The notes: a model not told the origin generated them from the sequence alone. DNA of 64,000 nucleotides from Haliotis rufescens (GCF_023055435.1 NW_025963890.1:34534001-34598000), one strand, 5' to 3'; positions 4,664 through 61,780 are shown, numbered from the stretch's first letter. Numbers and translations: made by a program.

Positions 4664-6975
4664 ATGGATTTGACTTGGATATTGTTAATCTATTCATCGC
4701 TTGATGTCGGAAGTTGGGGTACGTATACATATTACTATATATATATATATATTCATTTGTCTAAATACACATTGTTCCTTTTAAATGCTATGCATTCATA
4801 TCAATAAATGACTTTCTCATAACCTGTTTACTTGGTACCAATTCACTTCCTGCATATGAAACAACATCATTCTTTGCTTAAATCGTTTTTGTTTCAGGAG
4901 GCAATGATGTTTGCAAACATATTCACGAGTGCTGTCTTTATAAAGACAAACAGTGTAAAAGGGAAACGTCGTCAGATATTTGCAAAGTCGAATGCAGTAA
5001 ATATCATGATTGTTCCACAAATGACGTTCGGCTTTCGAAAGAAGGGATTGCATGTAATGCAAATTGTACAAATGACATTGGGGCATGTGATGTCGAATGC
5101 ATCCCTGGACATTACGGTACAAAATGTCATTTTGGATGTAATGGTAAATGTAGAATGCATAAGTGTTACAGAGATAATGGCTCGTGCGTTGACGGTTGTG
5201 AGGCAGGCTACTTTGGAGATAAGTGTGAGTCGGCATGTAACAGTAATTGCAAGGACAAAAAATGTGACAGGAGTAACGGAAGCTGCATCAATGGGTGTTC
5301 TCCTGGCTATTACGGTGAAGATTGTCTTAGTAAATGTGAAACATCATGCCGTTATCACGTTTGTGATGGGAAGACTGGCAACTGTCTTTTTGGATGCACT
5401 GAGGGGTTCTATGGGCTTCTGTGCCAAAAGACTTGCTCTGACGATTGCTTTCTGTGCCATCCTGAAATTGGGGAATGCATCATTGGTAGGTACATATTTG
5501 CAATAACTTTTGAAGTAAGTGCGAATTCAGAGCTTATCAGAGGGATTCGCGTATTGTGATACATACTTAAGTAACATAACCATATTATGTGGATAACAGA
5601 TTAAGAAAGGTTCTATATACCTTTGTGGATTCAGACAATAGCTCCTGGTAACTCTCTTGAATTGTTTCAGATCATATTCCTGAGCTCGAGGGTACTCCTT
5701 GCACCACGAAGATACTCGTTGTCTTTTGGGGGTCAGCTGGAGTGTTCATCCTCCTTGCTGGAGCGGCAGTGTTGATGTACAGGTAATTCACATTATTGTT
5801 TAATGTTTATGTATATTCAAACGCCAGTCTACATGTTGCCGTACATACGTAAGATAAACATACATGATGCCATTGGTCCAGATAATCAGCTATTGTTTTA
5901 AAACTGTTGATAACAGTAATGTTCTATTTTTCAAAAATATTTTTATCTTCTTTCATTTTCAATAACATGTCAAATATTAGCCCTGCTAACAATAAAATAT
6001 CAACATTTTAATCCACTTAGTCAGATCACCTTTTGACTGTTTATGACCCATCAGTGTAGTGATGAGTTATAACTTGTTTCCTAGTCATGGCTTAGGATAA
6101 TTCCTTTAGATCAACCATGATCAGCACCTTAGTCTTATTTTAGTTAATTACCTAAGTTAATAAATCTAACAGTAAAGTTTGCAATCAATACAATACAAAT
6201 GGGCTGATAACCTGACGCGTATACATTACTTTTGAAACTACACGTTGTCCGTCTGTATTGGTACAGTTAGGATAAAACAGCAAACAAAAAACGAATAATA
6301 TATTTCGTATTTATTCATCACAGGAGCCAAACTTGTAGTTACACTCACAAGAAAAAGAAGAGAGGATTAGACACGCTGTTCATAGATACTAGAGCTCCAA
6401 TGGGCTTACCCAACGTGCCCAGTCAGGACACCAGATCAAGCCACTATGAGGAAATCATGTGTGGTGACACAGATCGTCACTTTCAGCATATTAGTAAAAG
6501 TACGGGTAGTATAAACCTGAGAACCTTAATCAACACCATGAAACATCCAAACCAATGCAACACCGCTAAACGTAAAAGAAACAGGGCAAACGTCGGGAGA
6601 AACGCAATGTCACTTGCGTCATCGGTGCACACAATAGACAATTTTCCAACGTGTTGGCTAGGATCGGAGACTGATTTTGATGAAATGTCGGAACATCCTG
6701 ATAAGAAGGAAGCACCTCTGGTAAGATCCCTTCAAGCTTCCCAGAAGGAAGCCGTGCGTTTTTCAGATGCCCCAAAGGATGAGGATGAAGCAGAAGATAT
6801 GGATACATCCGTGAAGGAAAGAGAGGGAGAAACTAAGTCACAGGCTGACGATGTGCCAAGGGAAGAAGCTGGCAAGAGATCCTACATCTCCGCTGTTTTT
6901 AATGAAACGGATGAAGATACAATGATCGATGATACATGTAAAGGAATATATCCGGGATTGAAAAAGGAAGACTAA
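4664..6975 (+). CDS. G1: multiple EGF-like domain type I membrane receptor (MEGF10/SCARF-like), about 468 aa
   Basis: Exons 4664-4718 (signal MDLTWILLIYSSLDVGSWG), 4898-5485 (CxxGxxGxxC repeats), 5671-5782 (TM ILVVFWGSAGVFILLAGAAVLMY), 6324-6975 (tail with YEEI). All introns GT-AG, phases 1/1/2, 1407 nt in frame. Confidence 0.88.
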
Positions 6976-9137: not shown

Positions 9138-9420
9138 TTGTTTGTGCACCCCTCTATACAGCTGTATGTTTGTGCACCCCCTCTATACAGCTGTATGTTT
9201 GTGCACCCCCTCTATACAGCTGTATGTTTGTGCACCCCCTCTATACAGCTGTATGTTTGTGCACCCCCTCTATACAGCTGTATGTTTGTGCACCCCCAAT
9301 ACAGCTGTATGTCAGTGCACCCCCAATACAGCTGTATGTTTGTGCACCCCTCTATACAGCTGTATGTGTGTACACCCCTCTATACAGCTGTTTGTTTGTG
9401 AACCCCCTCTATACAGCTGT
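9138..9420. repeat. Minisatellite, about 29-bp unit, truncated by assembly gap
   Basis: Unit GTTTGTGCACCCCCTCTATACAGCTGTAT, about 10 copies, running into Ns at 9421. Confidence 0.95.
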
Positions 9421-9599
9421 NNNNNNNNNNNNNNNNNNNNNNNNNNNNNNNNNNNNNNNNNNNNNNNNNNNNNNNNNNNNNNNNNNNNNNNNNNNNNNNN
9501 NNNNNNNNNNNNNNNNNNNNNNNNNNNNNNNNNNNNNNNNNNNNNNNNNNNNNNNNNNNNNNNNNNNNNNNNNNNNNNNNNNNNNNNNNNNNNNNNNNN
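9421..9599. other. Assembly gap
   Basis: Run of N. Confidence 0.99.
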
Positions 9600-11430: not shown

Positions 11431-13233
11431 ATAAATACGTTTGATTAAAAGTGACTTACATTAAATTCATATGATGATAAACAAAATATTTATTTGGACT
11501 AAATGGTGTAAGATTCTCTCGGAACAAGCTAATAAGCCCTTTCCCTGTAAGATCTATAATAAGGAAGTTTGAACTGCCCATAAATAATTCATTTGAAATA
11601 TTTGATAGGAAAATAACCCCTATTTTAAAGTATGGAAGCGAAATATAGGGCTTTGTTTACAGAGAAAGTATGGAATGTGTCTGTAGGAAATTCTGTAAAT
11701 TCCAATTAGGTGTGGGGTATAGTTTTTCGAATGCGGCCACCTATGGGGAGTGTGGGAGACTTTCGTTAAGTTCTAATTATTATTGTTAAACTGCAAATGT
11801 TACATTTAAGTCAAAATATCAAATCTTGAAAAAGAACAACAGAATATACGGAAGTAGTGTCCATGCAACGTTGCATACAAAGTTTCAGAGCGAAGGACGT
11901 CTTTTGAGAGAGTTTTACAGCATATTCGAGGGTATCAAAGGGAGAAGGTAAGTACATAAAAAATTATATATTATCGAAAAATAACATGTGTTGAGCCCCG
12001 GCACTACTAACTTCGAACCTTTTGAAAAATGTCATGATCAGGTGTCATTATTGTTTTGAGAAGCAGTGTGAAGTTTGAGCTTCATTGTTCCGGTGGTTTC
12101 TGAAGAGAGAATGTTCACAAAACCTGGGATGCTTTTTTAGAGAAATAACAGCATGGTCAAGGTGCAAAGGTTAAATATAGGTCAAACTTAAAGTTCGAAA
12201 AAGAAACCCAGATTAGTATGTTGAGTAACACCACCAACTAAACACACAACGGATATCATTACTTTTGAAAAACATGGTAAGGGTTATCTATATAGCTGAC
12301 GAGGCGAATTTCGAATGTTTTGTAAGCACATTACACAAAACACATGTAGCGACAAGTTGTTTGTCGTTTGCAGTTTTAGGGGAAAGACCCTTCTTTAAAG
12401 CTGCAGAGTCCGTATCATTTCAGAATTTCACAATCTCCACAATCTAGTATATTTAAATGTTATTGACTCTCACGTCAGCACAATCTATTTGGACGTTTAT
12501 TATCATATAAACAAAATGCAGGTAGAGACATATCGCGTGACTGCATTTTACTGGAGCATGTAAAATGGAAATGATATTAACATTTGTCACGAACACGGCC
12601 CATGCCTTTTTATATTTTTCAATATTAATTCAAAAGAATTCACTTATTCTTTGAAAGGTCCTCTTCATTCATTATACGACTTGTCATACATTATGTAGAA
12701 AACAATGGTCGTTATCTTGATCTATTAAAGAAATAGCACCATTGTTCATGAAAATCAATCAAACGATCATAAAATGCACGCATAATATTATTGCCACGTA
12801 ACTGAAATTCAGGCTGTAAAGTTTACGGATCAAGAAACAGATTACAAATGGAAATACAAACACATCTTGTTATTATATTGCAAAATAATCCAGTATTTTC
12901 CGTAAAATGATAACACATGAACTGTTTCCTTTTGAGAACATTCAGTTTCCTTTAACATTTGATTTAATAGCCAATGTTTTTTTTATAGCAGGCACAGTTG
13001 GAGAAGAAGGAATGTGTCCTATGTACATTACGAATATGAGTTGTGTGGTATATGTATCAGTGAATAGATAGAAGATAAGAAGCATAACAAGTTTAAACAT
13101 TGAATGTGTTTATGGATGTAAGATTATTCAACATATTCAGGCAATGTGTCGCCATAGTGGTAGTGTCTGTTTTTGTGTTCGTGATAGTGTTCCCATTAAT
13201 TGGGTTACTATCCTCCTTTTCAACAGGGGAAAC

Positions 13234-15656
13234 ATGGACCTAATTTGGATTATGTACTTCTGTCTAACTCTTGTTCTTGCTCAAGATGACAAAGTGACCG
13301 GAAGTAAAGGTACGTAAGCGTTTAACCCATGTCACTATATTTCAAATACACATATAAATATTTATGTCTGCATGATTTCCTTTCAATGCTTTGACGAAGA
13401 CATACACCAGTCACATTTAAATATTGAGTAACAGATGAGTAACAGTTTACTTGTTCTCTGTCAAGTATCAATATATCACGCGAACCTATTTTACTCTTGT
13501 TTATTTCAGGAACTGTGAATGACAACCTGATAGCGCCAGCACAAGACACCACTACTGTCCGAGGTAGGTCAGTAGGTTTCCGGGATCAACATTAGGGATG
13601 TCATTTGAACAGAATTGGTTAGCAATATGACTAGATGTAACGTCACACGCTCTGATTGATATTATGGTACCAAATGTCAATGTAGTGATAAATGTTAAGA
13701 CACTAAATGCAACAGAGATACTGGCACTTGTCTTGGTGGTTGCCAGACAGGTTACTTTGGAATAACTTGTGGTAGAAAGAGAGCAACCATTTGATTTTAG
13801 TATGAGATCAGCATTATTTCTAAATGTTTCGGAGATCAATCTTTTTTTCCAACATAAACAGGTGCTCAAATTATTTAAATATATATATATTTTTTAAAAA
13901 CACTTTAATATAGTCACATCTACAGGATGGTTAGCTCTCTCTCTCTTTTTTTTGGCATCCGTTGAGCTCGGGAGTCCATGAATCCGCGCCCGTGTTGAAG
14001 TAAGGTCTTTGGCACTGGCAGAGCAGCCCCTGTGGCGGTTGTACAGGCTTACTCCGGAATGGCAGTCGCTGAGAGATGGCGTCCGTTGGCGCTGTACTCT
14101 TCGTTGGCGCTGGTCTTCCGCTCAGCCGGTTTTTCCTAGAAGACTTGCTGCAGCTTGGCCTCGCCTCTCTTGAGTCCTCTGCTGATCATGACGTCCTGCA
14201 CGTCCTGCCTCAATCGCCTGCAGACGGCGGCGCGTTCCTCCCATCGCTCCACGTCCATGTCCGCTTGCAGACGTCTTTGAAGGGGGGGGGGGGGGATAGG
14301 GACGTCCATGTGCCTTTTAGACAGAGGCGAACTTATTCGGGGTCCTCCCGTCCTCCATGCGGCGGACGTGGCCGAGCCAGCGAAGACGGCGTTGTTAGAG
14401 CAACGGAGGTTCAGGGGAGCAGGGAGAGAACTTCAATGTTTGTGACACTACTGCTGATTTTGACGATGCGCCAGGCTGCGCTAGTGAAAGGCGTTGAAAA
14501 TATTTTCTTGTCTGGAGAAGAGGGTCCAAAACTCGCTGTCGTACAGCAATTTGCTGACGTCACACATTCTCTTCGTCAATTTTGTGAGGACGGAAGACGC
14601 TTTGCCGACCCGCCTGTTGATCTGAGCATCCACGGGCAGATTGTGTGCGACGGGGGAGCCGAGGTAGGTGGACTTATATTCAGTTGTGCCTTGACATAAA
14701 TGTTCTGGCTTGGTATATTTCAGAACCCGAACCCGAACGTTCTTGCACAGCAGAGATACTCGCTGCTTTTTGGGGGTCAGTTGGAATGTTCATTCTACTT
14801 GCAGGAGCTGCAGTGATCATGTATAGGTAAGTCAGGCCAGTGCACATTAACACTGGATGAAGAGATATACTTAAATGATGTAATTCAATTTTAATTTCAA
14901 TCCCATGACTACCTGCAGTAACGCTCCTTTGCATATCAATTATGATGAAAGTAAATGTATGAATATATGACTGTACTTGCATTTGTCAAAGCATGTGTGT
15001 GTAGTTTTGTATGTGTGCGCGCGCATACGCTTTGCTTATCTTCCAATTATGATAAACATTGTTGTTCCCACAGGAATCGAATGCTTACTTCCATTGGGAA
15101 AAGGAGAAAAAAGGGATTAGATACACTGTTCGACGACACTTCCTCTCCTATGCGACCTCCGTCCAGGGCCCATCGAGAATCCATGTTAAGTGGCTATGCT
15201 GACGTAATGAGCATCGACACTGCCTGTCACTATCGTCGTGTCAGCAGAAGTCTTGGCAGTATCAACTTTAGAACGTTCAGAGCGAGCACCGTGAAGGGTT
15301 CTACTCTGTACAATACTAAAAGAAGTAAAATGAGCACAAACGCCGCAGTGGACATTACCATATCAGTGGAGCCCCCACAATTTAAAATATACGATCAGCA
15401 ATCGTATTGGTTGGGCACGGAGACGGACTTTGAAGACGTCTACAAAAGTTCCCCAAAGAAAAGGGCAACTCTTCGCAGATACTATGCAGGTCTTCAGGAG
15501 GACACCCGTACGGATAAAGATGAAGAGGATACAGCATCGGAGGAACCACGGGGAGCCACTGGGACGCAGACTCACTGTGCATCAAGGGATGTACGAAGCA
15601 AATTTCTTTACATCTCCCCTGTGTTTAACGAAAAAAATGCAGAATCAAAGACATGA
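13234..15656 (+). CDS. G2: paralog of G1 with degenerate EGF exon; predicted ectodomain-less membrane protein, about 271 aa (or a pseudogene)
   Basis: Exons 13234-13309 (signal MDLIWIMYFCLTLVLA), 13510-13563 (short exon ending at GAG|GTAGGT), 14724-14826 (TM ILAAFWGSVGMFILLAGAAVIMY), 15074-15656 (stop-free tail aligning to G1: GLDTLF, GSINxRT, WLGxETDF, YISxVFNE). 816 nt in frame. Confidence 0.65.
13564..13790 (+). pseudogene. Decayed remainder of the G2 EGF exon
   Basis: Reads CNVTRSD*YYGTKCQCSDKC*DTKCNRDTGTCLGGCQTGYFGITC with TGA at 13657 and TAA at 13696, in a different frame from the exon start, whose own frame hits TAG at 13593. Confidence 0.85.
13934..14690 (-). mobile_element. RTE-clade LINE, 5'-truncated and decayed, in G2 intron
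   Basis: Minus-strand translation gives RTE C-terminal motifs TYLGS, NAFH, RWLGHVRRMEDGR, FKDVCKR, DCHS; 3' end followed by an A/(GA)n tail; GC-richer than flanks. Confidence 0.8.
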
Positions 15657-16361: not shown

Positions 16362-16382
16362 TGTGTCTGTGTGTGTGCGTGT

Positions 16383-16423
<41 letters not shown>

Positions 16424-16437
16424 CGTGCGTGTGTGCG
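16362..16437. repeat. (TG)n/(TGCG)n microsatellite
   Basis: Directly visible. Confidence 0.95.
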
Positions 16438-20218: not shown

Positions 20219-22278
20219 ATGAGGGGTCAATGTTGCATGCACGTACTTGGAGTGGTAAGTTAGGTATTTGTTTCTAATCTATACGATGGATATACATGTA
20301 AGTTTGTTGTCTGTACGTGTTTTTTTCTAATGCTGCACTCGGCAATATTCCAGTTTTGTGACGGCGGTCTAAATAGTCGAATCTGGATCAGACAATCCAG
20401 TAACCATGAATCTATGCAATTAGCTAGTAAACGATGATATTCATCAACCCTGTCACCAAGTCACCCGATCTTTACTGAGGCAACAATAAAGTGGAGGTCG
20501 GATGACAATAGCGCATGTTTGTTGTTTTTTCACTCTCGCAATGTTTTACTCTGCCATTCATCGTGCTCTTACGTTTTTACTTCTTTTGATGAAACAAATG
20601 ATTATATACCTGATGTAATGGGTTTTGCAGAGTGTAATGGTGGGATTGGGATCTCTGTTGATACAAGCAAGTGAGTATTACATAATTATCATTGTCACAT
20701 ATTGTATTCTTTATGATCAGGAATCACTGTAAAGGTTTCATTAACACTCCTATGTGTATCACTGCTATATGATATTCCAAGAGTTCATTAAAGCAAAAAC
20801 AATATCGAATATTAATGTCCTGAAAACTATGTATGTTTCATAAATAAGTAACTGCTGTCATAACAGATGAGTCCTGCAACGAGAGATGTTCCTATTGTGT
20901 GGGGACGAAGTGTCGGGAATGCCTCTACGGCTGGTATGGACGCGATTGTAATGAAAAATGTAGTGAGTTTTGCTGGCATGGTGGATGTGAGAGGATAACA
21001 GGACGGTGTCACCAGTGTGTTCCTGGGAGACACTCTGGCTACTGCAACCAACTCTGCTCACACCACTGCAGGGAGAATAGCAAGGGTCAGGTCAACTGTG
21101 ACTTATCAACTGGAAACTGTTTGGAGGACTGCGTAGAGGGAAGATGGGGTCCACGATGCCAGCACAGATGTCATGCAAACTGTAAAGATGAACTTTGCTA
21201 CAAAGAAGATGGAGGATGTCTGAAAGGCTGCCTTGATGGACTGTATGGCGTCAAGTGTAAAAAGCAATGTTCAGAAGGTTGTTTGAGCAGCACGTGTGAA
21301 TGGTTGACTGGTAAATGTAACCAAGGATGTAAGGTTGGTTTCCTTGGCTCCACCTGTTCGTACCCCATGACTAGACACTGTCTGAACCAGGCTTACTATG
21401 CAGAGCATCATACCATGGCGTGTACCGATGGATGTGAAGATGGTTACACTTCAGCAAGTTGCAACGAAACATGTAATACCAGATGTCTTAAATGTCATCA
21501 GTATTCACAGACATGTCAGTTATGTATGTCTGGATTTTATGGAGACAAATGCCAACTTGAATGTCATACGAACTGTCAGGAATTGAACTGTGACATGTCT
21601 GGTCGATGTGACAGAGGGTGTAAACGAGGTTTCCGCGGTGGATATTGTAATGAAACCTGCCCATACAACTGTTTGGCATGTAGTCAACATTACAAGACTT
21701 GTACTGAGTGTAAAGTAGGGTATACTGGTGCTACGTGTACAGAGGTGGAGTCATACAACAAGTTAGACGTCACAGGTAATGATGCTACATATCTATTCTA
21801 AAATACATTGTTAACAAACCTTGGTGAAAACCTTAACTGAAAGAAGCGGAATTAGCGTCGATGTGCATACATAGTGTTAATACATTTGACGTGATACCGT
21901 TGGCTACAACAATAAAACAGATATACGGATTAACGAATCTTTGTCTCAGAGTATATCCTCTGTATACATTTAGATTTTCCCTGTACAAGCATTTCTGGAA
22001 ATTCGGGGTCCGGCATAATGAGGTTTACTGTGTAATGCTCTTTCTTAACAGTTCAGTATTACCATGTAACCCATTAAATGTTCAAGAGTAGTTACATGTT
22101 CTTGATAGTTCTCAGACTATATGAAAATCGCATGTAGCTATGCTTAACATCTATAACGTTTGTTTCAGTCAAAGTGTCTTGCCTCGTTTCAGATACGGTG
22201 TCACACAGCAAGGCCTGCATCTGGTTAACACTAACAATGTGGACTGTAACGTATCAGTTGTCCTCGTGCATAACGTGA
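20219..22278 (+). CDS. G3: multiple EGF-like domain protein, putatively GPI-anchored or secreted, about 356 aa
   Basis: Exons 20219-20254 and 20631-20670 (split signal MRGQCCMHVLGV/SVMVGLGSLLIQA), 20867-21775 (EGF-like repeats), 22193-22278 (DTVSHSKACIWLTLTMWTVTYQLSSCIT*). 1071 nt in frame; an alternative in-frame acceptor ends at 22168. Confidence 0.82.
20315..20470 (-). mobile_element. SINE family C, partial, in G3 intron
   Basis: GCACTCGGCAATATTCCAG ... GACGGCGGTCT ... CAGACAATCCAG matches the reverse complement of the family C 3' half. Confidence 0.65.
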
Positions 22279-24601: not shown

Positions 24602-26357
24602 ATGACACTGCAACCCTGGCTTGTTGTCGCAGTGGTAAGATTGCTTATTGCTTTTCCATGAATGTTTCATATCGACAATGACACTCCTGTTAACCAACTC
24701 TGTTTACCTCATGCGTGTATCGTTCTGATATATAATTCATATGCAAATGTTGAAAAACTCAAATGTGTATTATGTTTGTAAAATAATATATATTCATACA
24801 TTTTTCATTTTAGTGTTTCAGTTCAGTGTTCGGATTTTCTTTGGTACATGGAAGTAAGTATATCTTCATTGTTATGTTTAAATAGCTCCAACAAGTTATA
24901 GCTGTATATCATAGTAACAACACGTTTTCGCTTTCGTAATAATATACTTGTATTAAATATACAATATATTTATTGAAATACAGTTAAATATCCGGAATTT
25001 CTGTACTCAAATACTGGTAAATAGTATACACACATGGTATCATTACAGGTGAGGTTTGCCACGAGAGATGTTCCTATTGTGTGGGGACGAAGTGTCGGGA
25101 ATGCCTCTACGGCTGGTATGGACGCGATTGTAATGAAAAATGTAGTGAGTTTTGCTGGCATGGTGGATGTGAGAGGATAACAGGACGGTGTCACCAGTGT
25201 GTTCCTGGGAGACACTCTGGCTACTGCAACCAACTCTGCTCACACCACTGCAGGGAGAATAGCAAGGGTCAGGTCAACTGTGACTTATCAACTGGAAACT
25301 GTTTGGAGGAATGTGCTGAAGGAAGATGGGGTCCACGATGCCAGCACAGATGTCATGCAAATTGCAAAGAAGGTCTTTGCTACAAAGAAGATGGAGGATG
25401 TTTGAAAGGCTGCCTTGATGGATGGCACGGCGTTAAATGTAATAACCGCTGTTCAGTCCGATGTCTCAACATCACGTGTCACTGGTTAACTGGTAAATGC
25501 ACACATGGATGTATCAAAGGTTTTACTGGCTCAAAATGTTCCCATCCACACACAAGACACTGTGTGGACCCTGAGGCATATCACACAGACGATCAGTCCG
25601 TGGTGTGCGAGGGAGGATGTAAGCCTGGGTGGACCTCTGCCCTCTGTGAAAACAAATGTGAGGAGAGGTGTGAGACATGTCACCAGTTTGACAAAACCTG
25701 TCAGTTGTGTCAGCCCGGATTTTATGGAGTAGCATGTCAACTTGAATGTGGCATGAACTGTAACCAAACACACTGTGACATGTCGGGTCAGTGTGACAAA
25801 GGGTGTATGAGCGGTTTCCGTGGTGTGTATTGCAATGAAACCTGTCCATTTAACTGTTTAAGGTGCAGTCAATTTCAAAACATATGTACAGTCTGTAAAC
25901 CAGAATACAAGGGCGACCAGTGTCATGAGACCACCACTCCTAAAGTTGGCCACGCTACAGGTACCTCTCGTATTGATTATTCTTCATAACTGAAATGTTT
26001 CTTCCTATCAACAGCCAAGTGGCATGCCTCACACATTTCATTTATCATCATTAACGTCATCACACCGATAAGACCAGTACCGTTATGTAAACTGTCGATG
26101 TCATATGACAACAGTGATATCAGATCACAGCCACAGTCACAATGTCATATCGGAAAAAGTTATCCATAAGATATGTAAGAATATATACAGTTCATGATTC
26201 TTGATTATTCTTGACATTTAAAACTGTTTACCCAAATATTGACACTTATACTAACTGTTGGCGTGGGTTTTCTTTTTCAGACGAGGGCGTACACAAACAG
26301 GCGAGCACCCTGACAGTAGTATTTCTTTATTCCGTAGCTCGTATTATTACAACCTGA
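24602..26357 (+). CDS. G4: multiple EGF-like domain protein, putatively GPI-anchored or secreted, about 353 aa; closest paralog of G3
   Basis: Exons 24602-24634 and 24814-24853 (signal MTLQPWLVVAV/CFSSVFGFSLVHG), 25049-25960 (EGF-like repeats), 26281-26357 (DEGVHKQASTLTVVFLYSVARIITT*). 1062 nt in frame. Confidence 0.85.
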
Positions 26358-35969: not shown

Positions 35970-38262
35970 ATGTCCTGGTGTTGCGCTGTGTTGGTGTTGG
36001 CTGCCGTTGTTGGTAAGTAGTTTCATGTCATTGTATACATTGATAAAATATATATCAGTCGATGTTTATCAGAACACATTATTGTCCAAGACGAATCACA
36101 AATTCAAAGTCATGTCTGATTTAATTCTTGTATGTGGACTGACTGTGTCTACTCGTTCATTTCAAATGTTATCAGGCCCTGTTTCTCCACTGTTAAGGAG
36201 TGAGTGAGTATGGTTTTACGCCGCTTTTAGCAATATTCCAGCAATATCACGGCGGGGGACACCAGAAATGGGCTTCACACATTGTACCCATGTCGGGAAT
36301 CGAACCCGGGTCTTCGGCGTGACGAGCGAACGCTTTAACCACTAGGCTACCCGACCGCCCCCCACTGTTAAGGAAGAAACGTACATTGTATGTAGCAATA
36401 GTTTACACGTCGTTTTAAGATTAAGATGATTCAACAATTTTATGAGATAAGATAGCTCAATATGCACGTGAACACATTTAACTGGTATCAGACATTTATG
36501 GAATACGTCTGTTTATGTTTTTAAAAGGAATTATCTCATTTTCAGAGACGTCTCAATACAGCAGTCACTGCTTAAGATCAACCGAACCCAAGCCGTGTAT
36601 GTACTGTGTGAGGGGGTGGTTTGGCGAGGACTGTAGCCGAAATTGTCCATCATGTGACAATTCTGGTTGTGACAGAAATACAGGCATATGCGTCAACTGT
36701 GCAGATGGGTTATACTCAGAAAGCTGTTCCTTGAAATGCCCAGATAACTGCAAGACGAGAAATGACAGCCAGGTTCGCTGTGAAAGGATTACAGGACATT
36801 GTATGGAAGACTGTAAATCTGGATGGTGGGGAGACAAGTGCAACAAGCGTTGTAGTGACAACTGTCTCCGTTCAGACTGTTTCTTCTATGATGGTTCGTG
36901 CGCTTGGGGCTGCAAGGATGGTTGGACGGGAAGCATGTGCACTGACAACTGTCCAGAAGAATGCTCCTTGAACAAATGCTCCCAACGTGGAAAATGTACT
37001 ATTGGGTGTAAGAAAGGTTTCTACGGAGAAACATGTGACAATAAATGCAGTGACACGTGTAGGAATAACAACTGCTACTTTGACAACATCATCCATTACA
37101 CGGTATGCCGAGATGGATGTAGCGATGGGTGGAAGGCAGCTTACTGTAATGAATCTTGTTCTACCGGTTGTAGAAAATGTAATCAACATAATGGTGAATG
37201 TTCCCTATGCATGGTTGGTCGCTGGGGTGTACAGTGTGAGAAACGCTGTTCAACCTGCAGCAACTCACTCTGTGATATCACTGGGGAGTGCACAGAAGGC
37301 TGTCAGAGTGGTTATCATGGACACATGTGTGACCGAGTATGTCAACCCGACTGCCTTGAGTGTCGCAAAAACGATAGCGAGTGCCTCGTATACAAACCTG
37401 GGAAGACGGATGAAAGTATTGATACTATTCTGGAAGATCTGGGTGAAAACCCCAATGATAGAGGTATGCAGGTACATCCACAGAATAGCGATACATTGAT
37501 CCAATTAACTGAGATATCCCCAATCCAGGACAAGTAAAACATTCCAGATAACATTCTATTAGTTTTGTTTGAATTTTCTTCTGTCAAAGATACATTGTGT
37601 CTTTATTTGTGAGTTGAAAAATAAAGAACAAATATAGACCTATTATGATATAAATACTCGACAACAAGTATCATTCCCCTCCATCTTACATACATCTATG
37701 CCACATAAAATTTATTTATTTTTATGGTCTCTGGAGCATGCATAATGACAGAACGTGTATAGGCATTTTAACCTGTATATACTTATGTATCTTTCAGGCG
37801 ACGCTCACGTCCTGAGGATAGCAATACCGGTCTCCGTCGCAGTGGCATTTGTTGTCTTCATAATTGTATTCATTGCCATCTGCAGGTAATGCTATAAAGA
37901 ATTATATCCTTTGTGAACTTTCACCATTCTTGCCAAGGGAAAAGTGTATAGTGTCTCGTACTGACGATCTTTAATGTTTTAATCTGTAGGCAGTGCCGAA
38001 AGCAGGGTAGATGATGTGTATTTAAGTAAAATCAATTTTTTAGAGTAATGTGTGGTTTCGGGGATAATTCATGAATCTATTAAATGTGGGTGTACATGAT
38101 GTCTTATGTGCTACAATATGTTGCAGGTGGAGAAAACTACATAAACGTGGGCATGTTGAGGAACAGCGTGTTACAGAGACACTCTCGGACTCTGAGACAG
38201 AGTCGTTTGTTACCCCCGAGACACAAGTCAAACGAAAGGCAACATCCCTGGAGATGTTGTAG
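35970..38262 (+). CDS. G6: multiple EGF-like domain type I membrane protein with short Tyr-free tail, about 394 aa
   Basis: Exons 35970-36012 (signal MSWCCAVLVLAAVV), 36546-37463 (EGF-like repeats), 37798-37885 (TM IAIPVSVAVAFVVFIIVFIAIC), 38127-38262 (RWRKLHKR...SLEML*). 1185 nt in frame. Confidence 0.88.
36200..36361 (-). mobile_element. tRNA-derived SINE family B in G6 intron 1
   Basis: Intact A and B boxes; perfect 13-bp TSD CCACTGTTAAGGA at 36187-36199 and 36362-36374, suggesting a young insertion. Confidence 0.93.
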
Positions 38263-42877: not shown

Positions 42878-44682
42878 TTACTGTTTAAAATTCAAACTGA
42901 AAACAACTACTGTAACCACAACCAGTGCATCATCCCCAGGCCTGCATGATCCACCTGCAAGAGAATATTTGTATTGCATTAATGCATTTGTATGTACATG
43001 AATATGTTTATGATGATGTGCCGAAGTACAAACACAAAAGTCTTTTTAAAACAAAAACTGATACAATTGATGGAAAGCACTATCCACTGTTATATTGTGT
43101 TACATGACTTTCATGAAAAATGTGAATGAAAACTAACTTCAAAGAATGTCTAAAAAATAACTAACGTTGACTTTCTTATGCAAAGAGGTTTTTGACTGAA
43201 TGTGCTAGTTGCTTACTTGTATTTACGTCGTCCTCATCTGGACACTCCTGAGAGTCATGTGTGATGGGCAGACATTTGACGTCGCATTTATCTTTACATC
43301 GACATGGCTCATGCGTCTCAAGGCATCCGTCACAAGCAGTGCCACAGCGGTTCTCACAGTTGTCTTCATGGTAACCGAGTTGGCAACTCCTGCATTTTCC
43401 ATCTCTATCACATGTCTTCCTGGAACACTTGGCACTACATGTTCTAGAGCAGTCAGTTCCCCAGTAGCCTTGCTTGCACCTGGAACATTCCCCAGTCTCT
43501 TGAGAACATGCCTCACAGTTACCAGGACACTTCAGCTTACAGTCGAGTGACATCCAGCCATCCACACAGCCCTGTCTGCAGACTGTAGACTTCATACTGT
43601 GGTCATAGAAACAGTCCTGGTCTCTACAGTGTCTGTTACACTGCTTATTGCAGTGATGTCCGTGAACACCGTGTTTACAACCTCGGGTACACTTATGGCT
43701 CCCGTATTGTTCACATGTTTCACCGTGACATCCCCCTGGACACCTGGTGTCACAACTGTCACCGGCCCAACCGTTCCTGCAGCCTCTAGCACATGAGCCG
43801 TCCCAGCCGTAGCATGAGTTGTTTTCACATCCATCACTGCACTTGTTTTCACACTTCTTTCCCCACCAACCGTCTTGACAGTTTTCCAGACAGTTTCCCG
43901 TCTTCCGGTTACAGTAGGGCTTGTCACCATGACTGTATCTACAGTTGGGAGGACATGTCTCTGTACACGTGGTGGCATGGTACCCAGCCCCACACTGTTT
44001 ACATCTCCCTGTGTCCTTGTCACAGCCGCCGACGTCGCAGAAGCCGGAACATTTGTAGCTGCAACTGTCACCATGCCAGCCTCTCTTGCAGTCAGCGCAA
44101 CGACCGTCGTCTGATGGCCAGAAACAGTTGGAATCAGTTGACGAATGATGTATAAAGAATACTGAAACAGATATAATATTGTTCATATTGGTTGGATGCC
44201 TAGATTATGTTTTGTCAAAATGGCCTTGAGGTGGTAACTAGAAATACTTTTATTACATATTAAGGACATTTCGATGCATTGTACTCGTATCGTCACTGGG
44301 TCAAATGTATCATGGACACACGTACATAATACAAACCAATTACAATAATAGAATATCATATTGCAATAAGTGTAACATTAAAATATGAATCCATAGATTT
44401 ACGCATATCTAAAACAAAACCACGAATAAATAAAAATATTGCGTTTCCTATGCTTTTAAAATTTCATGGTGACTCACTGCAGATAAACTTCAATCAGTGA
44501 GCAAGTCTAGATCTCGCCTGACAACCATCCTGGCAAGAAAGACGGACAATGTATCAATCATTTAAAACTTAATGGAATTATTTCATGCATGACTTTAAAG
44601 AAACGTACTACACTTGTTTCAAGTGTCATTGACAGTTTTTGCACTTACACAGTACCGGCAGTGGGCTTCTCGTCACGTCCAT
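42878..44682 (-). CDS. G7: multiple EGF-like domain protein, putatively GPI-anchored, about 351 aa
   Basis: Exons on -: 44682-44649 (MDVTRSPLPVL), 44161-43217 (LFFIHHSST followed by EGF-like repeats), 42954-42878 (SGSCRPGDDALVVVTVVVFSLNFKQ*). 1056 nt in frame. First exon is the least certain. Confidence 0.82.
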
Positions 44683-49361: not shown

Positions 49362-49749
49362 ACTGATTCACGCAATACATGCTCTGCTTTTTGTCGACTT
49401 TCCTAATTGAGATTTAAATATCAAATTGAGTAATCACATCTTTACCTTTACTTAATTATAATTTTCAAGGGATTACAAGAACAATAATATAGCTATGAAA
49501 ATCCGTTTTTTTTAATAAAGTCACTGTTACTTCTAATTTATTATTTCTAACTTAATTGCAACAAAAATATGTCACAATATTGTATCAACACATGGAACCT
49601 TATGTCTCCTTAACTGAACTGTTGTTAAATGATAAAAACAAATGCTTGAGTCTCCGTTAGCCTATCAATGCATACCACCCCACCAATCTCCCTTATTTAT
49701 ATGTATTTTCCATTTTTTTTATTTTTTATAACAAATGTCTTAGTGTCCA

Positions 49750-51388
49750 TGCCGTTGGTAATAGCAGTTTACAGGGATGTTCAACATCAACGCTTTTCTC
49801 AACATATGTTCTGTCATAACCTTTTATGGAAAAAAGCATAAGCATAAGCGTACTTCTAAAACTTTCACAGTAGTCGATGTCCAAACATTATGTTTGTACT
49901 TCAGACAAACGTGTTCAAATCCGCACAACATTCATCTTCGTCCATCTTGTTGTTTCCAAGGTGTGCAGCTATACAGATGTATGTTGGTTCTTCTGAATCA
50001 AAGGGTTATTGTGGTCTGTTTACTGGATGAAACCAATCATCTTTGCGTCGCTTCTCCGGGATATCTGCTTTAGGGTGATGCTTTGTCGTGCTCCATCTTC
50101 CCCCAAGGCCTCATTTTAAACAGATGAAATTAACTGTGGCACTGAGACCAGGTCAGTTTCACGTATCTTCAGTGGATTCATTATTAAGCGTTCCATTTCT
50201 ATCCACTACGTCCATGGTCGAAGCATTCTGATCACTAGCAAGTTGATTTGTCTCCAATCTAAAAATACAAATACGTTGTCGTAATATTTAAGCACTCTGA
50301 TTTATTAACGTAATAGTGAAATAGTGATGTTGATATTTACATTGTATGCACAAACCTTTAATTGTCAGTTTATTAAAAGTAAAATTAATAACGTTAAATG
50401 TTTAATGTGTGGGTGAGTGAGTCAATCAGTCAGTCATATTTAATCAACACATACATACATTGAAATATCTTTGTACATGTTCCTTTCAAATATTTGACAT
50501 TTTATGCACAAACCTTTAATTGTCAATGTATGAAAAGTAAAATTATAACGTTAAATTTTATTTGACGTCATATTTCATCAGCACATATTCATGGACATAT
50601 CTACATACATTCATAGTTCATTTTAAAGTTCGGATTTCTTACTTTCATCTCCTCCCTTTACGACATTACATGCCACGCCCTGCTCCAGACACATCGTGTG
50701 GCGTTCCTCCCCACATCCGCAAGCACCATCCGCCTGGAGACATCTCTCACAGTCAGTCCCACAATATGTCTGGTGCAGTCAGTCCCCAAGTAGCCTTGCT
50801 TGCATCTGAAACATTCCCCAGTCTCTTGAGAACACGCTTCACAGTTACTAGGACACTTCAGCCTACAGTCGAGAGACATCCAGCCATCCACAAAGCCCTG
50901 TCTGCATACTGTAGACTTCATTCTGTGGTCACAGAAACAGTCCTGATCTGCATATCAGTGATGTCAGTGAAGACCGTGTTTACAACCTCGGGTACACCTA
51001 TGGCTCCCGTACTGTTCACATGTGTCACCGTGACATCCCCCTGGACAACTGGTGTCACAACCGTCACCAGTCCAACCGTTCCTGCAGCCTCTAGCACACG
51101 ACCCATCCCAGCCGTAGCTGGGGTTGTCTTCACATCCATCACTGCACTTGTTTTCACAGTCAGTCAGCCGACAAATTTTCAGACAGTTTCCTGTCTCCCG
51201 GTCACAGTGGGCTTGTCATCATTACTGAATCTGCAGTTGGGGGGACATGTATCTGTACAGTTGGTGGCTGTCGCCGATATCACAAACGCCGAAACATTTG
51301 TAGTTGTCATTGTCTCAATATCAGCCACTCTTGCAGTCAGTGCAACGAACGTCGACTGATGGCGAGAGACAGTTAGAATCAAAGAATA
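49750..51388 (-). pseudogene. G8: chimeric pseudogene (G7-like EGF exon plus G9-like cytoplasmic exon)
   Basis: 51388-50643 aligns to the G7 EGF exon with stops (KSG*Y*D), deletions and frameshifts; 50258 to about 49750 aligns to the G9 tail exon (59430-58830) with stops; no TM exon seen between them. Confidence 0.85.
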
Positions 51389-51492
51389 CTGAAACATATA
51401 TACTATTGTCCTTTTTTTCTCATACAAATGATACATTGATGTCTTTTGGGTTTATTGAACATGAGTCAATGTGCCAAACAAATATGCCAGAA

Positions 51493-51620: not shown

Positions 51621-51654
51621 TGCATCTCACCAAAAGCTTGAATAATCGCTCACA

Positions 51655-58814: not shown

Positions 58815-58829
58815 TAAAATGTTTCAGTG

Positions 58830-61780
58830 TTCATGCCGTGGGTAATACCAGGTCATAGATATGTTCCATATCAACGCTTTTATCAACATACGCCGTCAGA
58901 ACCAAATACTGTTAAACATTTATCTGCATGCATTAGCGTACTTCTAGAATCTGCACAGTTGTCCACGTCCAAACTAATGTTTGAAGTCGCCTTGACAGAT
59001 GTAAACCAGCACGTGAATCGGACGGCACATAATCTTCCCCTTCATGATCAGAGAAACTGTTTAACTCAGCAGAACATACATCTTTGTTCATCTTGTGGTT
59101 TCCAAGATGTGTTGCCATAGGTAGCTTATGTGCATCTTCTGAATCAAAGAGTTCTTTGGTCTGTTTACTGGATGAAACCGATAGTCTTCACGTCGCTTCT
59201 CCGGAATATCTAGTTTCGGAAGATACTTCGTCCTATTCCATCCTCCCTCCAGGTCTTCATATTGAACAGATCAAATTAAGTGCGGCACTGAGTCAAGGTC
59301 AGTATCATGAATATCCCAATATTTATGAGGGGAATCATAATCTGTGGATCTAGTATCCTGCGTTCCATTTCTACCCACCACGTCCATGGTTGAAGCACTC
59401 TGGTTATGAGTTGGTGGATTCGTCTCCGATCTAAATGGAAGGTTAAGATTACTGTAGACAGATCTTCATTTCACTGATTTAAACACTTAGATTTGTTTGA
59501 GTCACCATCCTATGAAGTAGAAGTTTCCATCTTTAATTCATTAAGTTGATAATAACGTTATTGAACTGATATTTTGGCACGATGTTCTTATAGTTTACCT
59601 CCTCTGATGTCTGTATTTGTAAGCGCATATTTTGTAGAAGAACACCAAGACTCCTCCAAGAAGGACAACTCTCAGGGTTGAACAGGCAATCAGGACGGTG
59701 TTGGGGTCCAATTTCTGCAAATACTCGTCACCTAAATAAAAATTAAATAATCACAAACATGTAGTGACGAACGGCATGAGGAAAGTGATGACCACAAGGT
59801 ACAATTAGAACTACAATCCGTAATTAGAAAATAAACATACGATGTTTTTGATTTAAGATGTTTCGATGTGTGAACTCATATTTCATTATGGACATGTTTT
59901 AATTCGTCCATTGTCTGATGTATTGATTCGTTTGCTTAGTCTCTTACTACACTTATAATTTATTTGATGCACTTTATATTTCTTTGTCAATTCATTTTTG
60001 AACCCAAAATTGTATATATTACACAAACCAACAATATATTGAAGATGCAGCATTCCTGTCTGTCTTATCAAGTACAACATATGAACATGAATATAGACAC
60101 CGAAAACGTACAACTCCATCATGATCATAAATTCACCACACCAAGAAATTCAATAATTATATATCATAGTCAATGTTGCTCATTTATGGAACAGACATAC
60201 GTAACTGTTTATACATAACACATATTTTATCTTAGAAAATATGAAGTGGAATCGCATGCAGTCGTGTGAAGGAAGCGAACAGCTACGCATGAACCAACAC
60301 CTACACGTTCTCCCTGTATTTCCATGAGCACACTTAGAACAGTTCCATGTGTCCTTATGACAGCGTAGGCAGTTCTATGGGCAAGGCGACATGCAGTCCT
60401 TGCGATCAGGTAAACACCTTATACAACCTTCCCCACAACCTGGCCTGCAAGGTCTTTCATATTAAGTTCCTTTAAATCCCGATGCACACGTTCTGCAATC
60501 ACCGATCAGTTTGGCGCATCTACCTTTGCAGTTTTGAGGACAACGTTTGTCACACTTCATAGTTGAACGCATTCGAACCCTGTACACAAATACTACCGTA
60601 GCGCTCGCATTTAGAACATGTCGACAGACAATCTTCTTGACAGCATGTTCCCTGTTTACCATCAACGCATCCGTCTTTACAGGCCAGGTTTTTTTCTGCA
60701 CTCCACAGCGTGAGTTGATGCATGTATCAGAACAGTTCAGGTCACACTCTGTGTCATAGAAACGTGAGTCTGCACACACGGAAGACTGTACCAATTCATG
60801 CTGGGTTGGCTGTTGTAAGAGTAAGGGGAAATGTAATTTTGAAAAAAATGAAGAGGAAAATAAGTTTTAAAAAGGTGTATCTACTGAAGGGACACATTTT
60901 TTATTTTCATGATTTACGGATTTAATCGTTAGCTTAGGCCCTTCGACAAGAAATAGTTCTATGCAATCGCCCATTTTTTTATGGACATGATTATTTTACA
61001 TTGGTTTAGTTAGGAAACATAAATGCAGAAAAGGTAAAAAATGCAGTGTGTTATTTTACTGTTTTTCTAACATGTGCATTTCTAAAAGCGATTGTTTAAT
61101 GCTGCAACCGCAATTTAGCATTAGCATGTATTGGTGTCAATACATTACATCTGAAAAACCTGTCTTCTCTGTCTAAGAAGTTACAGTGACAACACAAACT
61201 GCACTTAATCAGTTACCCTATGTGAGGTTCATAGTTACTTAAAGTTGATACATGATGGTTGCCCTATCTTTATATTGTTCTAAGTAAACAAAATAAAACA
61301 GATGAGAAAAGAAATAAATAAATAAACAGTTTTTTTGTTGTTGTTTTTTGTTGTTGTTGTTTTGTTGTTGTTGTTTGTTTGTTCTTTTTGGGGGGGTGAT
61401 TGTGTCTTTTGACCTCGGTTGGTCGGATGCGGAAATAAAACGTTATAACGAGCATGGCAGATATGATTAACTCTACAGCAAGGTCGATCCATGCTTTCCA
61501 ATAAGGAAGAAGTGTTTGGCTTTCTTGTACCTTACACCAGTCTTACACACACTGATAAATTGCTGCAAAACGACGCACTGATTGTGACATGTATGAACAG
61601 ATAAAGGCTTTTTGGTGACTGTAAAACTGACGTAAGGTTTAACAAAACACTGTTTCCTTATAAAAAAAACCTATGGAGTTAATTATATCTTTAATGCTAA
61701 GTATAACCTTTTGTTTACCACATTCCACTGACAGGTGTCAAACGCCACAAAGAACAGCACCACCAACATGTACGCCACAT
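58830..61780 (-). pseudogene. G9: pseudogene of a multiple-EGF type I receptor
   Basis: Signal-like exon 61769-61719 (MLVVLFFVAFDTCQWNV), decayed Cys-rich exon pieces at about 61618-61535 and 60809-60260 (stops and frameshifts, e.g. CASGFKGT*), open TM exon 59731-59599, tail exon from 59430 (QDTRS as in G1) with premature TGA at 59273-59271. Confidence 0.8.
61330..61388. repeat. (TTG)n-rich microsatellite
   Basis: Directly visible. Confidence 0.85.

What the first reader, a model, noticed from the sequence alone, without database searches (positions are those of the whole stretch)
4664..61780. Nine-locus multi-EGF receptor cluster with interchangeable C-termini: candidate paired-receptor or recognition complex
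Seen: nine paralogous loci in 57 kb (six +, three -, convergent). Outputs differ: long Tyr-motif tails (G1, G5, dead G9), Tyr-free tail (G6), no tail with hydrophobic end (G3, G4, G7), tail without ectodomain (G2), plus a chimeric pseudogene (G8). Established: MEGF10/Draper/CED-1 and SCARF proteins are EGF-repeat phagocytic and scavenger receptors signalling through Tyr motifs, and vertebrate paired-receptor clusters (KIR, LILR, SIRP, CEACAM) mix signalling, truncated and, in CEACAM, GPI forms and evolve by birth-and-death and conversion. Inference: this is an analogous invertebrate system built on EGF repeats, for immune, allo- or gamete recognition. Automated annotation would likely label each locus only as MEGF10-like.
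Basis: partly seen in the sequence, partly recalled or inferred. Interest (0 to 1): 0.82.

Follow-up and report, generated by a model that had tools for sequence, protein, structure and literature searches.

The report
Abalone multi-EGF receptor gene array slice
The nine loci are real, but they are a 57-kb slice of a much larger and mostly old tandem array of SCARF1/MEGF-like EGF-repeat surface-protein genes in red abalone, and the sequence evidence does not support a KIR-like paired-receptor system.

Summary
The window is Haliotis rufescens, and public gene models map onto it at 100% identity. It holds eight loci with a large multi-EGF exon and one paralogue without EGF repeats (G2). Six lie on the + strand and three on the − strand.

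The described C-termini are there:
- G1 and G5 have a transmembrane (TM) segment and a tail with tyrosines.
- G6 has a TM segment and a 45-aa tail without tyrosine.
- G3, G4 and G7 end in a short hydrophobic, GPI-signal-like exon.
- G2 has a signal peptide, TM and tail only, with a decayed EGF remnant and a LINE fragment in its intron.
- G8 (G7-like EGF exon plus G9-like tail exon) and G9 are broken.
- No exon touches an assembly gap.

- The cluster is part of an array of at least 25 loci over about 250 kb, in a genome with many such arrays.
- Ectodomains of members with different C-termini are only 27–39% identical. Close pairs share the same C-terminus.
- G2, G3, G4 and G6 have one-to-one counterparts in other Haliotis species.
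- Pairwise dN/dS is 0.36–0.39.
- Gene conversion and pseudogene formation are real.

The closest analogues are SCARF1, molluscan MEGF expansions and the Drosophila Nimrod cluster. First-stage notes of this scan record similar EGF-receptor clusters on other pieces of this genome.

The parts
4664..6975 (+). G1: an intact type-I receptor of 468 aa. Exons lie at about 4664-4718 (signal peptide), 4898-5485 (about 4.5 EGF units), 5671-5782 (juxtamembrane Cys plus TM) and 6324-6975 (216-aa tail with SHYEEI, YISAV and YPGL).
   Evidence: Public model P0027 maps at 100% identity. Splice sites were read and tail motifs.
13144..15656 (+). G2: an EGF-less paralogue of G1 (LOC124111908, 271 or 301 aa). Exons lie at about 13144/13234-13312, 13515-13563, 14723-14828 (TM) and 15075-15656 (tail with YADV-x8-YRRV and YISPV).
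   Evidence: P0021 and P0024 map at 100% identity. Counterparts without EGF repeats exist in H. cracherodii and H. asinina. This tail type has only two copies in the genome and three relatives among 1.84 billion representative proteins.
13636..13788 (+). A decayed remnant of about 1.3 EGF units with two in-frame stops, lying in G2 intron 2. It is 49% identical to G1 residues 82-128.
   Evidence: tblastn, translation.
13950..14700 (-). A GC-rich fragment of a non-LTR retrotransposon (reverse-transcriptase C-terminal motif ...LRWLGHVRRMEDGR...) in the G2 intron next to the EGF remnant.
   Evidence: Translation and composition. There is no Pfam hit on the + strand ORF. The element type is judged from the motif, from my own knowledge.
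20866..22278 (+). G3: an EGF exon at about 20866-21775 (about 8 units) and a terminal exon at 22193-22278 with a GPI-signal-like end. The first exon was not located.
   Evidence: The H. asinina counterpart is the first half of P0016. No public H. rufescens model was retrieved for this locus.
24602..26357 (+). G4: a 353-aa protein with exons at 24602-24634, 24814-24856, 25049-25960 (EGF) and 26278-26357 (hydrophobic GPI-signal-like end).
   Evidence: P0017 maps at 100% identity. The same C-terminus occurs in H. rubra and H. asinina.
20879..21128 (+). A 250-bp tract identical to 25061-25310 in G4. This is a gene-conversion tract over the N-terminal EGF units.
   Evidence: dS is 0 over codons 21-80 and rises above 0.8 further along. 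Identity between paralogues exceeds identity between counterparts in other species in the N-terminal half only.
29233..31708 (+). G5: exons at 29233-29287, 29511-30413 (EGF, about 9 units), 30635-30751 (TM) and 31254-31708 (151-aa tail rich in Ser and Pro, with YSVI, STYESL and YITPV).
   Evidence: Residues 1-507 of P0008 map at 100% identity. The tail is single-copy in the genome.
35970..38262 (+). G6: a signal-peptide exon at about 35970-36012, an EGF exon at 36546-37466, a TM exon at 37798-37887, and a tail exon at 38126-38262 encoding a 45-aa acidic, Ser/Thr-rich tail without tyrosine.
   Evidence: P0008 residues 513-891 and P0001. Counterparts exist in H. cracherodii (95%), H. asinina (78%) and H. 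rubra, with a near-identical tail.
42878..44204 (-). G7: an EGF exon at about 44150-43217 and a terminal exon at 42954-42878 carrying a textbook-like GPI signal pattern (S-G-S, six-residue spacer, then ALVVVTVVVFSLNF). The first exon was not located.
   Evidence: It is 94% nt identical to a broken copy 48 kb away. The model is inferred from splice sites only.
49733..51410 (-). G8: a pseudogene. It has a G7-like EGF exon (51410-50587, at least 7 stops plus deletions) and a G9-like tail exon (50263-49733). No TM exon was found.
58817..60866 (-). G9: a pseudogene. It has EGF remnants (60866-60183, with stops and a frameshift), a TM exon (59696-59640) and a broken tail exon (59435-59050).
   Evidence: An intact relative lies at C112:34604432-34605049.

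Best explanation
The window holds part of a large, mostly ancient tandem array of genes for SCARF1/MEGF-like surface proteins in the red abalone.

**Common gene plan.** Each gene has a signal-peptide exon or exons. One big exon follows, with phase-1 junctions where they were read, encoding 4–9 six-cysteine EGF-like units. Cysteine spacing is about 3-3-4-6-3-8. A C-terminal module completes the gene.

**C-terminal divergence.** The paralogues diverged deeply and acquired different modules:
- TM plus a long tyrosine- and Ser/Pro-containing tail (G1, G5).
- TM plus a short conserved acidic tail (G6).
- A short hydrophobic end that looks like a GPI-attachment signal (G3, G4, G7).

**Evolution of the array.**
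- Old duplications: counterparts are shared across the genus.
- Recurrent local gene conversion.
- Exon truncation together with a LINE insertion, giving the EGF-less G2.
- Recombination between neighbours, giving G8.
- Decay of young copies on the − strand side.

**Function (inferred only).** The proteins are probably independent ligand-binding, scavenger or adhesion receptors with differing membrane anchoring and signalling. They are not a coordinated activating/inhibitory pair system.

**Shown versus inferred.** Gene structures, homology, array size, conversion, pseudogenes and conservation across species are shown. GPI anchoring, tyrosine-motif signalling and any immune role are inferred.
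For: - **Species and models:** searches give 100% mapping of H. rufescens public models for G1, G2, G4, G5 and G6.
- **Fold and family:** a profile of the ectodomains hits human SCARF1 (8hna_B, E 3e-6) and Tie2 EGF repeats. The AlphaFold2 model (pLDDT 76.6) best matches the SCARF1 N-terminal fragment (Foldseek E 1.5e-7). No Pfam family reaches its threshold.
- **Array size:** the window is C112:34534001-34598000. There were 124 scored matches from 1525 first-look candidates. EGF exons run from 34.39 to 34.64 Mb, and further arrays lie on C112 (8.65-8.98 Mb), C157, C1, C583, C594 and C39.
- **Deep divergence:** identity between intact array members is mostly 27–48%.
- **Counterparts across Haliotis:** found for G2, G3, G4 and G6.
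- **Conversion:**
- **Pseudogenes and the chimera:**
- **G2 derived from a G1-like gene:**
- **Literature:** MEGF families are reported as expanded in a vent snail (PMC7895826). Many 'MEGF10 family' transcripts respond to a parasite in oysters (PMC9892467).
Against:
- The G3 and G7 models rest on splice-site reading and homology. Their first exons were not found.
- GPI anchoring cannot be predicted with validated software here. The G3 end is only weakly hydrophobic.
- Pairwise dN/dS over whole exons cannot exclude positive selection at a few sites.
- ITIM-consensus motifs (G1 SHYEEI, G2 SGYADV, G5 STYESL) and the mix of tailed and tail-less forms are compatible with some regulatory interplay.
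Confidence: 0.75

Rival explanations
1. One reading: a paired-receptor-like recognition complex. Members with signalling tails, tail-less or GPI members and an adaptor-like member would act together on shared ligands, and would evolve by birth-and-death, as KIR, LILR, SIRP and CEACAM do.
For: - A tandem cluster with TM-tailed, GPI-signal-like and EGF-less members.
- ITIM-consensus motifs in G1, G2 and G5.
- Conversion tracts and pseudogenes.
- A chimeric G8 shows that an ectodomain exon and a tail exon have been recombined at least once.
Against: - Ectodomains of members with different ends are 27–39% identical. Similar ectodomains share the same end.
- The only swapped copy is dead.
- No TM-anchored tail-less member with a charged TM residue exists.
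- One-to-one counterparts across the genus exist for G2, G3, G4 and G6.
- dN/dS is 0.36–0.39.
- The tails are unique or two-copy in the genome rather than shared modules.
Confidence: 0.1
2. A receptor–adaptor or decoy module. G2 is derived from a G1-like receptor by loss of the EGF exon. It would pair with G1, or with GPI-anchored neighbours, through its juxtamembrane Cys and TM segment. It would then signal through its ITAM-like YADV-x8-YRRV block, or compete with G1 for cytoplasmic partners.
For: - G2 is a conserved gene with intact open reading frames in three Haliotis species.
- The TM exons of G1 and G2 are 69% identical. A conserved Cys sits just outside the membrane. At the same boundary position G1 has K and G2 has E.
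- The two-tyrosine block is conserved in H. asinina (YAEV-x8-YRRI). G1 has F at the second position.
Against: - The evidence is pattern matching only. Valine at +3 is not the canonical ITAM residue.
- The charged residues lie at the membrane boundary, not in the TM core.
- The tail is about 190 aa, unlike short adaptor tails.
- No interaction test was run. A structure-based pairing test of two TM helices would not have been discriminating.
Confidence: 0.1
3. The function is not in immunity. The proteins would serve cell adhesion, development or extracellular-matrix and shell-related roles. In that case the array is an ordinary lineage-specific expansion of EGF-repeat surface or secreted proteins.
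For: - No immune-specific domain is present, and Pfam finds nothing.
- Fold neighbours include Notch ligands, Tie2, laminin and netrin EGF rods.
- Conservation and purifying selection are seen across the genus.
Against: - The closest solved structure is the scavenger receptor SCARF1.
- MEGF-like genes respond to infection in oysters (PMC9892467).
Confidence: 0.15

Closest known systems
Vertebrate SCARF1/SCARF2 (SREC-I/II), class F scavenger receptors
   Same: - Type-I membrane proteins whose ectodomain is only a run of EGF-like units with no EMI domain.
- SCARF1 is the best profile match (8hna_B, E 3e-6) and the best fold match (E 1.5e-7).
- G5 has a long Ser/Pro-rich tail (47 of 151 residues), as SCARF1 does by my own knowledge.
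- The NCBI pipeline names several Haliotis counterparts 'SCARF1-like'.
   Different: - Hundreds of loci in tandem arrays rather than two genes.
- The proteins are much shorter (350–510 aa).
- Some members have GPI-signal-like ends, and one has no EGF repeats.
- The C5–C6 spacing is mostly 3 residues.
- Orthology to the vertebrate genes was not tested.
MEGF10/MEGF11/Jedi, Draper and CED-1 engulfment receptors
   Same: EGF-repeat type-I receptors with tyrosine motifs in the tail. Automated names for G4 and relatives are 'MEGF10'.
   Different: - No EMI domain.
- No NPxY motif in any tail, and no canonical ITAM.
- No CCxGY motif.
Drosophila Nimrod gene cluster (NimA, NimB1-5, NimC1-4)
   Same: - A tandem cluster of about 10 invertebrate genes for EGF-like (NIM) repeat proteins, some of which are hemocyte phagocytosis receptors (PMC6852320).
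- It mixes membrane-bound and non-TM members (my own knowledge).
- This is the nearest known system-level analogue.
   Different: - The strict NIM consensus is absent here.
- The abalone array is larger.
- It includes GPI-signal-like ends and an EGF-less derivative.
- There are no functional data.
Molluscan MEGF/EGF-repeat gene expansions
   Same: The MEGF family is reported as expanded in Gigantopelta aegis (PMC7895826). Many 'MEGF10 family' transcripts are reported in Crassostrea virginica (PMC9892467). First-stage notes of this scan record similar clusters elsewhere in this genome.
   Different: The papers I read list these genes only as family counts or differentially expressed genes. Locus-level anatomy (C-terminal classes, conversion, the EGF-less member) was not described in them.
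Vertebrate paired-receptor and CEACAM clusters
   Same: Tandem paralogues, a mix of TM-tailed and GPI-like members, ITIM-consensus motifs, gene conversion and pseudogenes.
   Different: - The fold differs (EGF rather than Ig).
- The ectodomains of the different output classes are not similar.
- There is no charged-TM activating form.
- Most members are conserved one-to-one across the genus.

Membership tests
SCARF (class F scavenger receptor)-like | The ectodomain consists only of tandem EGF-like units directly after the signal peptide | tested here: met
   Cysteine spacing and unit counts. The public models start with a signal peptide followed by EGF units. No other domain was found.
SCARF (class F scavenger receptor)-like | Detectable sequence and fold similarity to SCARF1 | tested here: met
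   hmmsearch E 3.2e-6 to 8hna_B. Foldseek E 1.5e-7, probability 1.0. TM-scores are low because the rods are flexible.
SCARF (class F scavenger receptor)-like | A single TM segment plus a long Ser/Pro-rich cytoplasmic domain | tested here: inconclusive
   Met for G5. G1 has a long tail that is not Pro-rich. G6 has a short tail. G3, G4 and G7 have no TM segment or tail.
SCARF (class F scavenger receptor)-like | Orthology to vertebrate SCARF1/2, shown by a phylogeny | not tested
   No tree with outgroups was built.
MEGF10/Draper/CED-1 | An N-terminal EMI domain | tested here: not met
   No EMI hit even at E ≤ 5.
MEGF10/Draper/CED-1 | NPxY and YxxL/ITAM motifs in the tail | tested here: not met
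   No tail has NPxY. Only isolated YxxΦ motifs and a YxxV-x8-YxxV block in G2 were found.
Nimrod (NIM-repeat) family | The NIM consensus (CxPxCxxxCxNGxCxxPxxCxCxxGY) and a CCxGY motif | tested here: not met
   Zero strict matches and no CCxG[YFW] motif.
Paired receptors (KIR/LILR/SIRP type) | Highly similar ectodomains joined to opposite signalling ends | tested here: not met
   Identity is 27–39% between classes. The similar pairs G3/G4 (70%) and G7/flanking copy (65%) share the same end. G8 is the only exception and is a pseudogene.
Paired receptors (KIR/LILR/SIRP type) | Inhibitory members carry an ITIM | tested here: inconclusive
   The consensus [SIVL]xYxx[ILV] is present in G1, G2 and G5, and is conserved in H. 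asinina G2. This is a pattern match only.
Paired receptors (KIR/LILR/SIRP type) | Activating members have a short tail and a charged TM residue that pairs with an ITAM adaptor | tested here: not met
   The tail-less members lack a TM segment. No charged residue lies in any TM core.
Paired receptors (KIR/LILR/SIRP type) | Rapid birth-and-death, with no stable one-to-one orthologues | tested here: inconclusive
   Stable counterparts exist for G2, G3, G4 and G6. The − strand G7-like group has 4 of 6 copies broken, plus recent conversion.
GPI-anchored proteins | An N-terminal signal peptide plus a C-terminal ω site with small residues, a short polar spacer and a terminal hydrophobic stretch | tested here: inconclusive
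   By eye, G7 fits well, G4 fits plausibly and G3 fits weakly. No validated predictor and no biochemistry were available.

The most novel reading that the evidence does not exclude
G2 is a mollusc-specific signalling adaptor or decoy. It arose from a G1-like EGF receptor that lost its ectodomain exon through a new donor site, with a LINE fragment now next to the remnant. It has been kept across the genus Haliotis.

It retains a juxtamembrane Cys, a G1-like TM segment with an opposite boundary charge (E versus K), and a conserved two-tyrosine ITAM-like block.

It would couple G1, or the neighbouring GPI-anchored EGF proteins that lack a tail, to tyrosine-kinase signalling. That would be a convergent counterpart of DAP12/FcRγ logic built from an EGF receptor family.
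Probability: 0.1. Interest if true: 0.75.

Novelty: new member of a known kind. Interest (0 to 1): 0.35.

Why it matters
Large expansions of EGF-repeat 'MEGF10-like' genes are a recurring and poorly understood feature of mollusc genomes. They often appear in infection transcriptomes. This locus gives a worked example of how such arrays are built and evolve:

- a shared exon plan
- three kinds of membrane anchoring or signalling end
- repeated homogenisation of the N-terminal repeats only
- an EGF-less derivative kept for the life of the genus
- two public gene models that fuse neighbouring genes (G5+G6 in H. rufescens, G3+G4 in H. asinina)

This helps annotation and gives concrete candidates for hemocyte receptor studies in abalone, namely G1/G2 and the GPI-like forms. 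It does not by itself reveal a new kind of recognition system.

Tried and rejected
- **Pfam.** Scans of all exons and full models gave nothing above threshold.
- **PDB.** phmmer of G4 against PDB gave nothing. Only the profile search worked.
- **ESM Atlas on G2.** It returned only generic short single-pass membrane proteins.
- **First exons.** tblastn with H. asinina and H. rubra N-termini did not locate the first exon of G3. Conserved-block search did not locate the first exon of G7.
- **Shared tail modules.** The idea that tails are modules shared across the family was rejected. The G1/G2 tail occurs twice and the G5 tail once in the genome.
- **Missing exons in gaps.** The idea that G3, G4 and G7 merely lack TM exons hidden in assembly gaps was rejected. 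The gaps are intergenic, and the same ends occur in other species.
- **Complex prediction.** It was not run on G1–G2. A pass for two TM helices would not have changed my odds.
- **Joined models.** Only public protein ids and single exons by reference were used.
- **Literature.** A search for LOC124111908 found nothing.

Full report
**1. What the window is**

Six-frame scanning finds eight long Cys-rich open frames (14–16% Cys). Six are intact and two are broken. All are paralogous, with BLASTP E-values from 1e-30 to 0.

Word searches identify the organism. [quoted passage not shown] Members of the same clusters are H. rufescens RefSeq proteins. Five public models map onto the window at 100% identity:
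- P0027 = G1, 468 aa.
- P0021/P0024 = G2, LOC124111908.
- P0017 = G4, 'MEGF10'.
- P0008 = one 891-aa 'MEGF6' model that fuses G5 and G6.

The window is contig C112:34534001-34598000 of a 1.33-Gb assembly.

**2. Check of the observation**

Strand layout (G1–G6 on +, G7–G9 on −) and all described C-termini are confirmed.
- TM exons exist for G1 (5712-5768), G2 (about 14750-14820), G5 (30685-30741), G6 (37824-37880) and G9 (59696-59640).
- G4 ends, in the public model, with a 25-aa exon: DEGVHKQASTLTVVFLYSVARIITT*.
- G3 has a consensus donor (ACAG|GTAATG, 21775/6) and an acceptor at 22192/3. This gives ...DTVSHSKACIWLTLTMWTVTYQLSSCIT*. That exon is homologous to the corresponding part of the H. 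asinina model.
- G7 has a donor ACAA|GTAAGC (43217/6) and an acceptor at 42955/4. This gives ...SGSCRPGDDALVVVTVVVFSLNFKQ*.

No stronger TM candidate lies downstream of G3, G4 or G7.

G2 has a signal peptide, a 16-aa mini-exon, a TM exon and a 193-aa tail. Its intron holds a decayed remnant of about 1.3 EGF units. The remnant is 49% identical to G1 and has two stops. An antisense LINE reverse-transcriptase fragment lies next to it. The mini-exon begins like the G1 EGF exon, so the ectodomain exon was truncated at a new donor site.

G8 has a G7-like EGF exon with at least 7 stops, and a tail exon homologous only to that of G9. G9 is broken by stops and a frameshift.

The three assembly gaps are intergenic relative to every mapped exon, and no reading frame crosses them. 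Only the unlocated first exon of G7 and the 3' end of G8 could be affected by gap 49156-49361.

**3. Context changes the picture**

A six-frame search of the whole assembly with the G7 exon gave 124 scored matches out of 1525 first-look candidates.

I fetched 204 kb of flanks. Intact or broken EGF exons run from 34.39 to 34.64 Mb. About 11 more lie upstream, nearly all on the + strand, and one ends only 1.8 kb before the window. Five more lie downstream on the − strand, three of them broken.

Further arrays lie at C112:8.65-8.98 Mb and on C157, C1, C583, C594 and C39. The 'nine-locus cluster' is therefore a slice cut by the window edges.

Intact array members are mostly 27–48% identical. A few pairs are closer, at 61–70%.

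Flanking members also show both TM-type and hydrophobic-end candidates. One example is ...VLLTATAIIIFTDSIYCLE* after the G7-like copy at 34.600 Mb.

**4. What the proteins are**

No Pfam family reaches its threshold, and there is no EMI domain.

The repeat is a six-cysteine unit with spacing of about 3-3-4-6-3-8 (or 3-3-2-6-2-8) and a C-x(1-3)-C-xx-G-aromatic-x-G-xx-C signature. There are 4–5 units in G1 and 8–9 in the others.

A profile of seven ectodomains hits human SCARF1 (E 3e-6) and Tie2 EGF repeats in the PDB. An AlphaFold2 model of G4 (mean pLDDT 76.6) is closest to the SCARF1 N-terminal fragment (Foldseek E 1.5e-7). Notch ligands, Tie2, laminin and netrin EGF rods follow.

The proteins are therefore SCARF-like EGF rods. 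They fail the defining features of MEGF10/Draper/CED-1 (no EMI domain, no NPxY) and of Nimrod (no strict NIM consensus, no CCxGY).

**5. Tails**

- The G1 and G2 tails are homologous at 33% identity. This tail type occurs only twice in the genome. It has only three relatives among 1.84 billion representative proteins, all from Haliotis.
- The G5 tail is single-copy.
- Motifs: an ITIM-consensus site in G1 (SHYEEI), G2 (SGYADV; SSYAEV in H. asinina) and G5 (STYESL). G1, G2 and G5 share a C-terminal Y-I-[ST]-[PA]-V motif. G2 has a conserved YxxV-x8-YxxV/I block, where G1 has F at the second tyrosine position.
- G6 has a 45-aa tail without tyrosine that is almost invariant in four species.

These are pattern matches, not evidence of signalling.

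**6. Evolution**

G3 and G4 share a 250-bp identical tract (20879-21128 = 25061-25310). dS is 0 over codons 21–80 and climbs above 0.8 in the C-terminal half. Overall dN/dS is 0.36.

With H. rubra and H. asinina sequences:
- In the N-terminal 150 columns, paralogues within a species are closer to each other (88.7% in H. rufescens, 88.6% in H. asinina) than counterparts between species are (75–79%).
- In the C-terminal half, counterparts are 74–82% identical and paralogues only 50–55%.

The G3/G4 duplication is therefore older than the divergence of these species. The N-terminal EGF units have been homogenised repeatedly in both lineages.

G7 and its relatives show the same mosaic pattern. dS is 0–0.15 across codons 141–280 and above 1 in most flanking windows, with dN/dS 0.39. 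G7 is 94% nt identical to a broken copy 48 kb away. Four of six G7-like copies are broken.

The + strand genes G2, G3, G4 and G6 have single counterparts in H. cracherodii, H. rubra and/or H. asinina. The region therefore combines an old, stable part with a young, turning-over part.

**7. The paired-receptor idea**

The defining property is similar ectodomains coupled to opposite outputs. It is not met:
- Different output classes have 27–39% ectodomain identity.
- The close pairs share the same kind of end.
- The only swapped copy is a pseudogene.
- No charged-TM activating form exists.

**8. Comparison with what is known**

- MEGF expansion is reported in a vent snail (PMC7895826).
- Many 'MEGF10 family' transcripts respond to Perkinsus in oysters (PMC9892467).
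- An Aplysia immunome survey lists MEGF10 as a C1q receptor orthologue (PMC9334734).
- The Drosophila Nimrod cluster is an established invertebrate cluster of EGF-repeat hemocyte receptors (PMC6852320).
- First-stage notes from other pieces of this genome describe similar EGF-receptor clusters with varying tails.

The general kind is therefore known. What is new is the locus-level anatomy, the GPI-like class and the conserved EGF-less G2.

**9. Verdict**

It is an ordinary member of a known kind, a lineage-specific array of SCARF/MEGF-like genes.

The most interesting residue is G2 as a possible adaptor or decoy derived from a receptor, with a probability of about 0.1.

Interest is 0.35.

Noticed in passing
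window 29233-38262: The H. rufescens RefSeq model XP_046327755.2 ('MEGF6', 891 aa) joins G5 and G6 into one protein. It skips the G5 stop codon and the G6 signal-peptide exon. H. cracherodii, H. asinina and H. rubra annotate the G6 counterpart alone, at 396-397 aa. This is probably a read-through or merged model.
   Followed up: partly
P0016 (H. asinina XP_067678729.1), corresponding to window 20866-26357: The H. asinina model fuses the G3 and G4 counterparts into one 701-aa protein. This is the same kind of merge as the G5+G6 model.
   Followed up: partly
window 1321-2740: A 37-bp minisatellite with 38 copies and 93% matches, upstream of G1.
   Followed up: no
window 9135-9420: A 29-bp minisatellite with 10 copies that runs straight into assembly gap 9421-9599. 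The gap probably reflects this repeat.
   Followed up: no
window 52483-54156 (−): Three ORFs of 107-195 aa between G8 and G9 that look like the C-terminal part of a non-LTR retrotransposon polyprotein. None has a Pfam hit.
   Followed up: partly
window 47127-47329 and 49075-49149: A short interspersed repeat of about 200 bp. The 268 kb examined around the window holds about 20 copies at 70-89% identity, on both strands.
   Followed up: no
G000:C112:34531274-34532182 (1.8 kb before window base 1): Another intact EGF exon with a TM-like segment at 34532373-34532423. The first kilobases of the window may therefore belong to that upstream gene's 3' region.
   Followed up: partly
G000:C112:34625481-34626165: A G7-like copy with one TGA stop whose EGF exon is 94% nt identical to G7 (longest identical run 187 bp). 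This indicates recent conversion between a live gene and a broken one 48 kb apart.
   Followed up: partly
window 16361-16435 and 17846-17929: (GTGT)n and (CA)n microsatellites in the somewhat GC-richer 14-18 kb stretch after G2.
   Followed up: no
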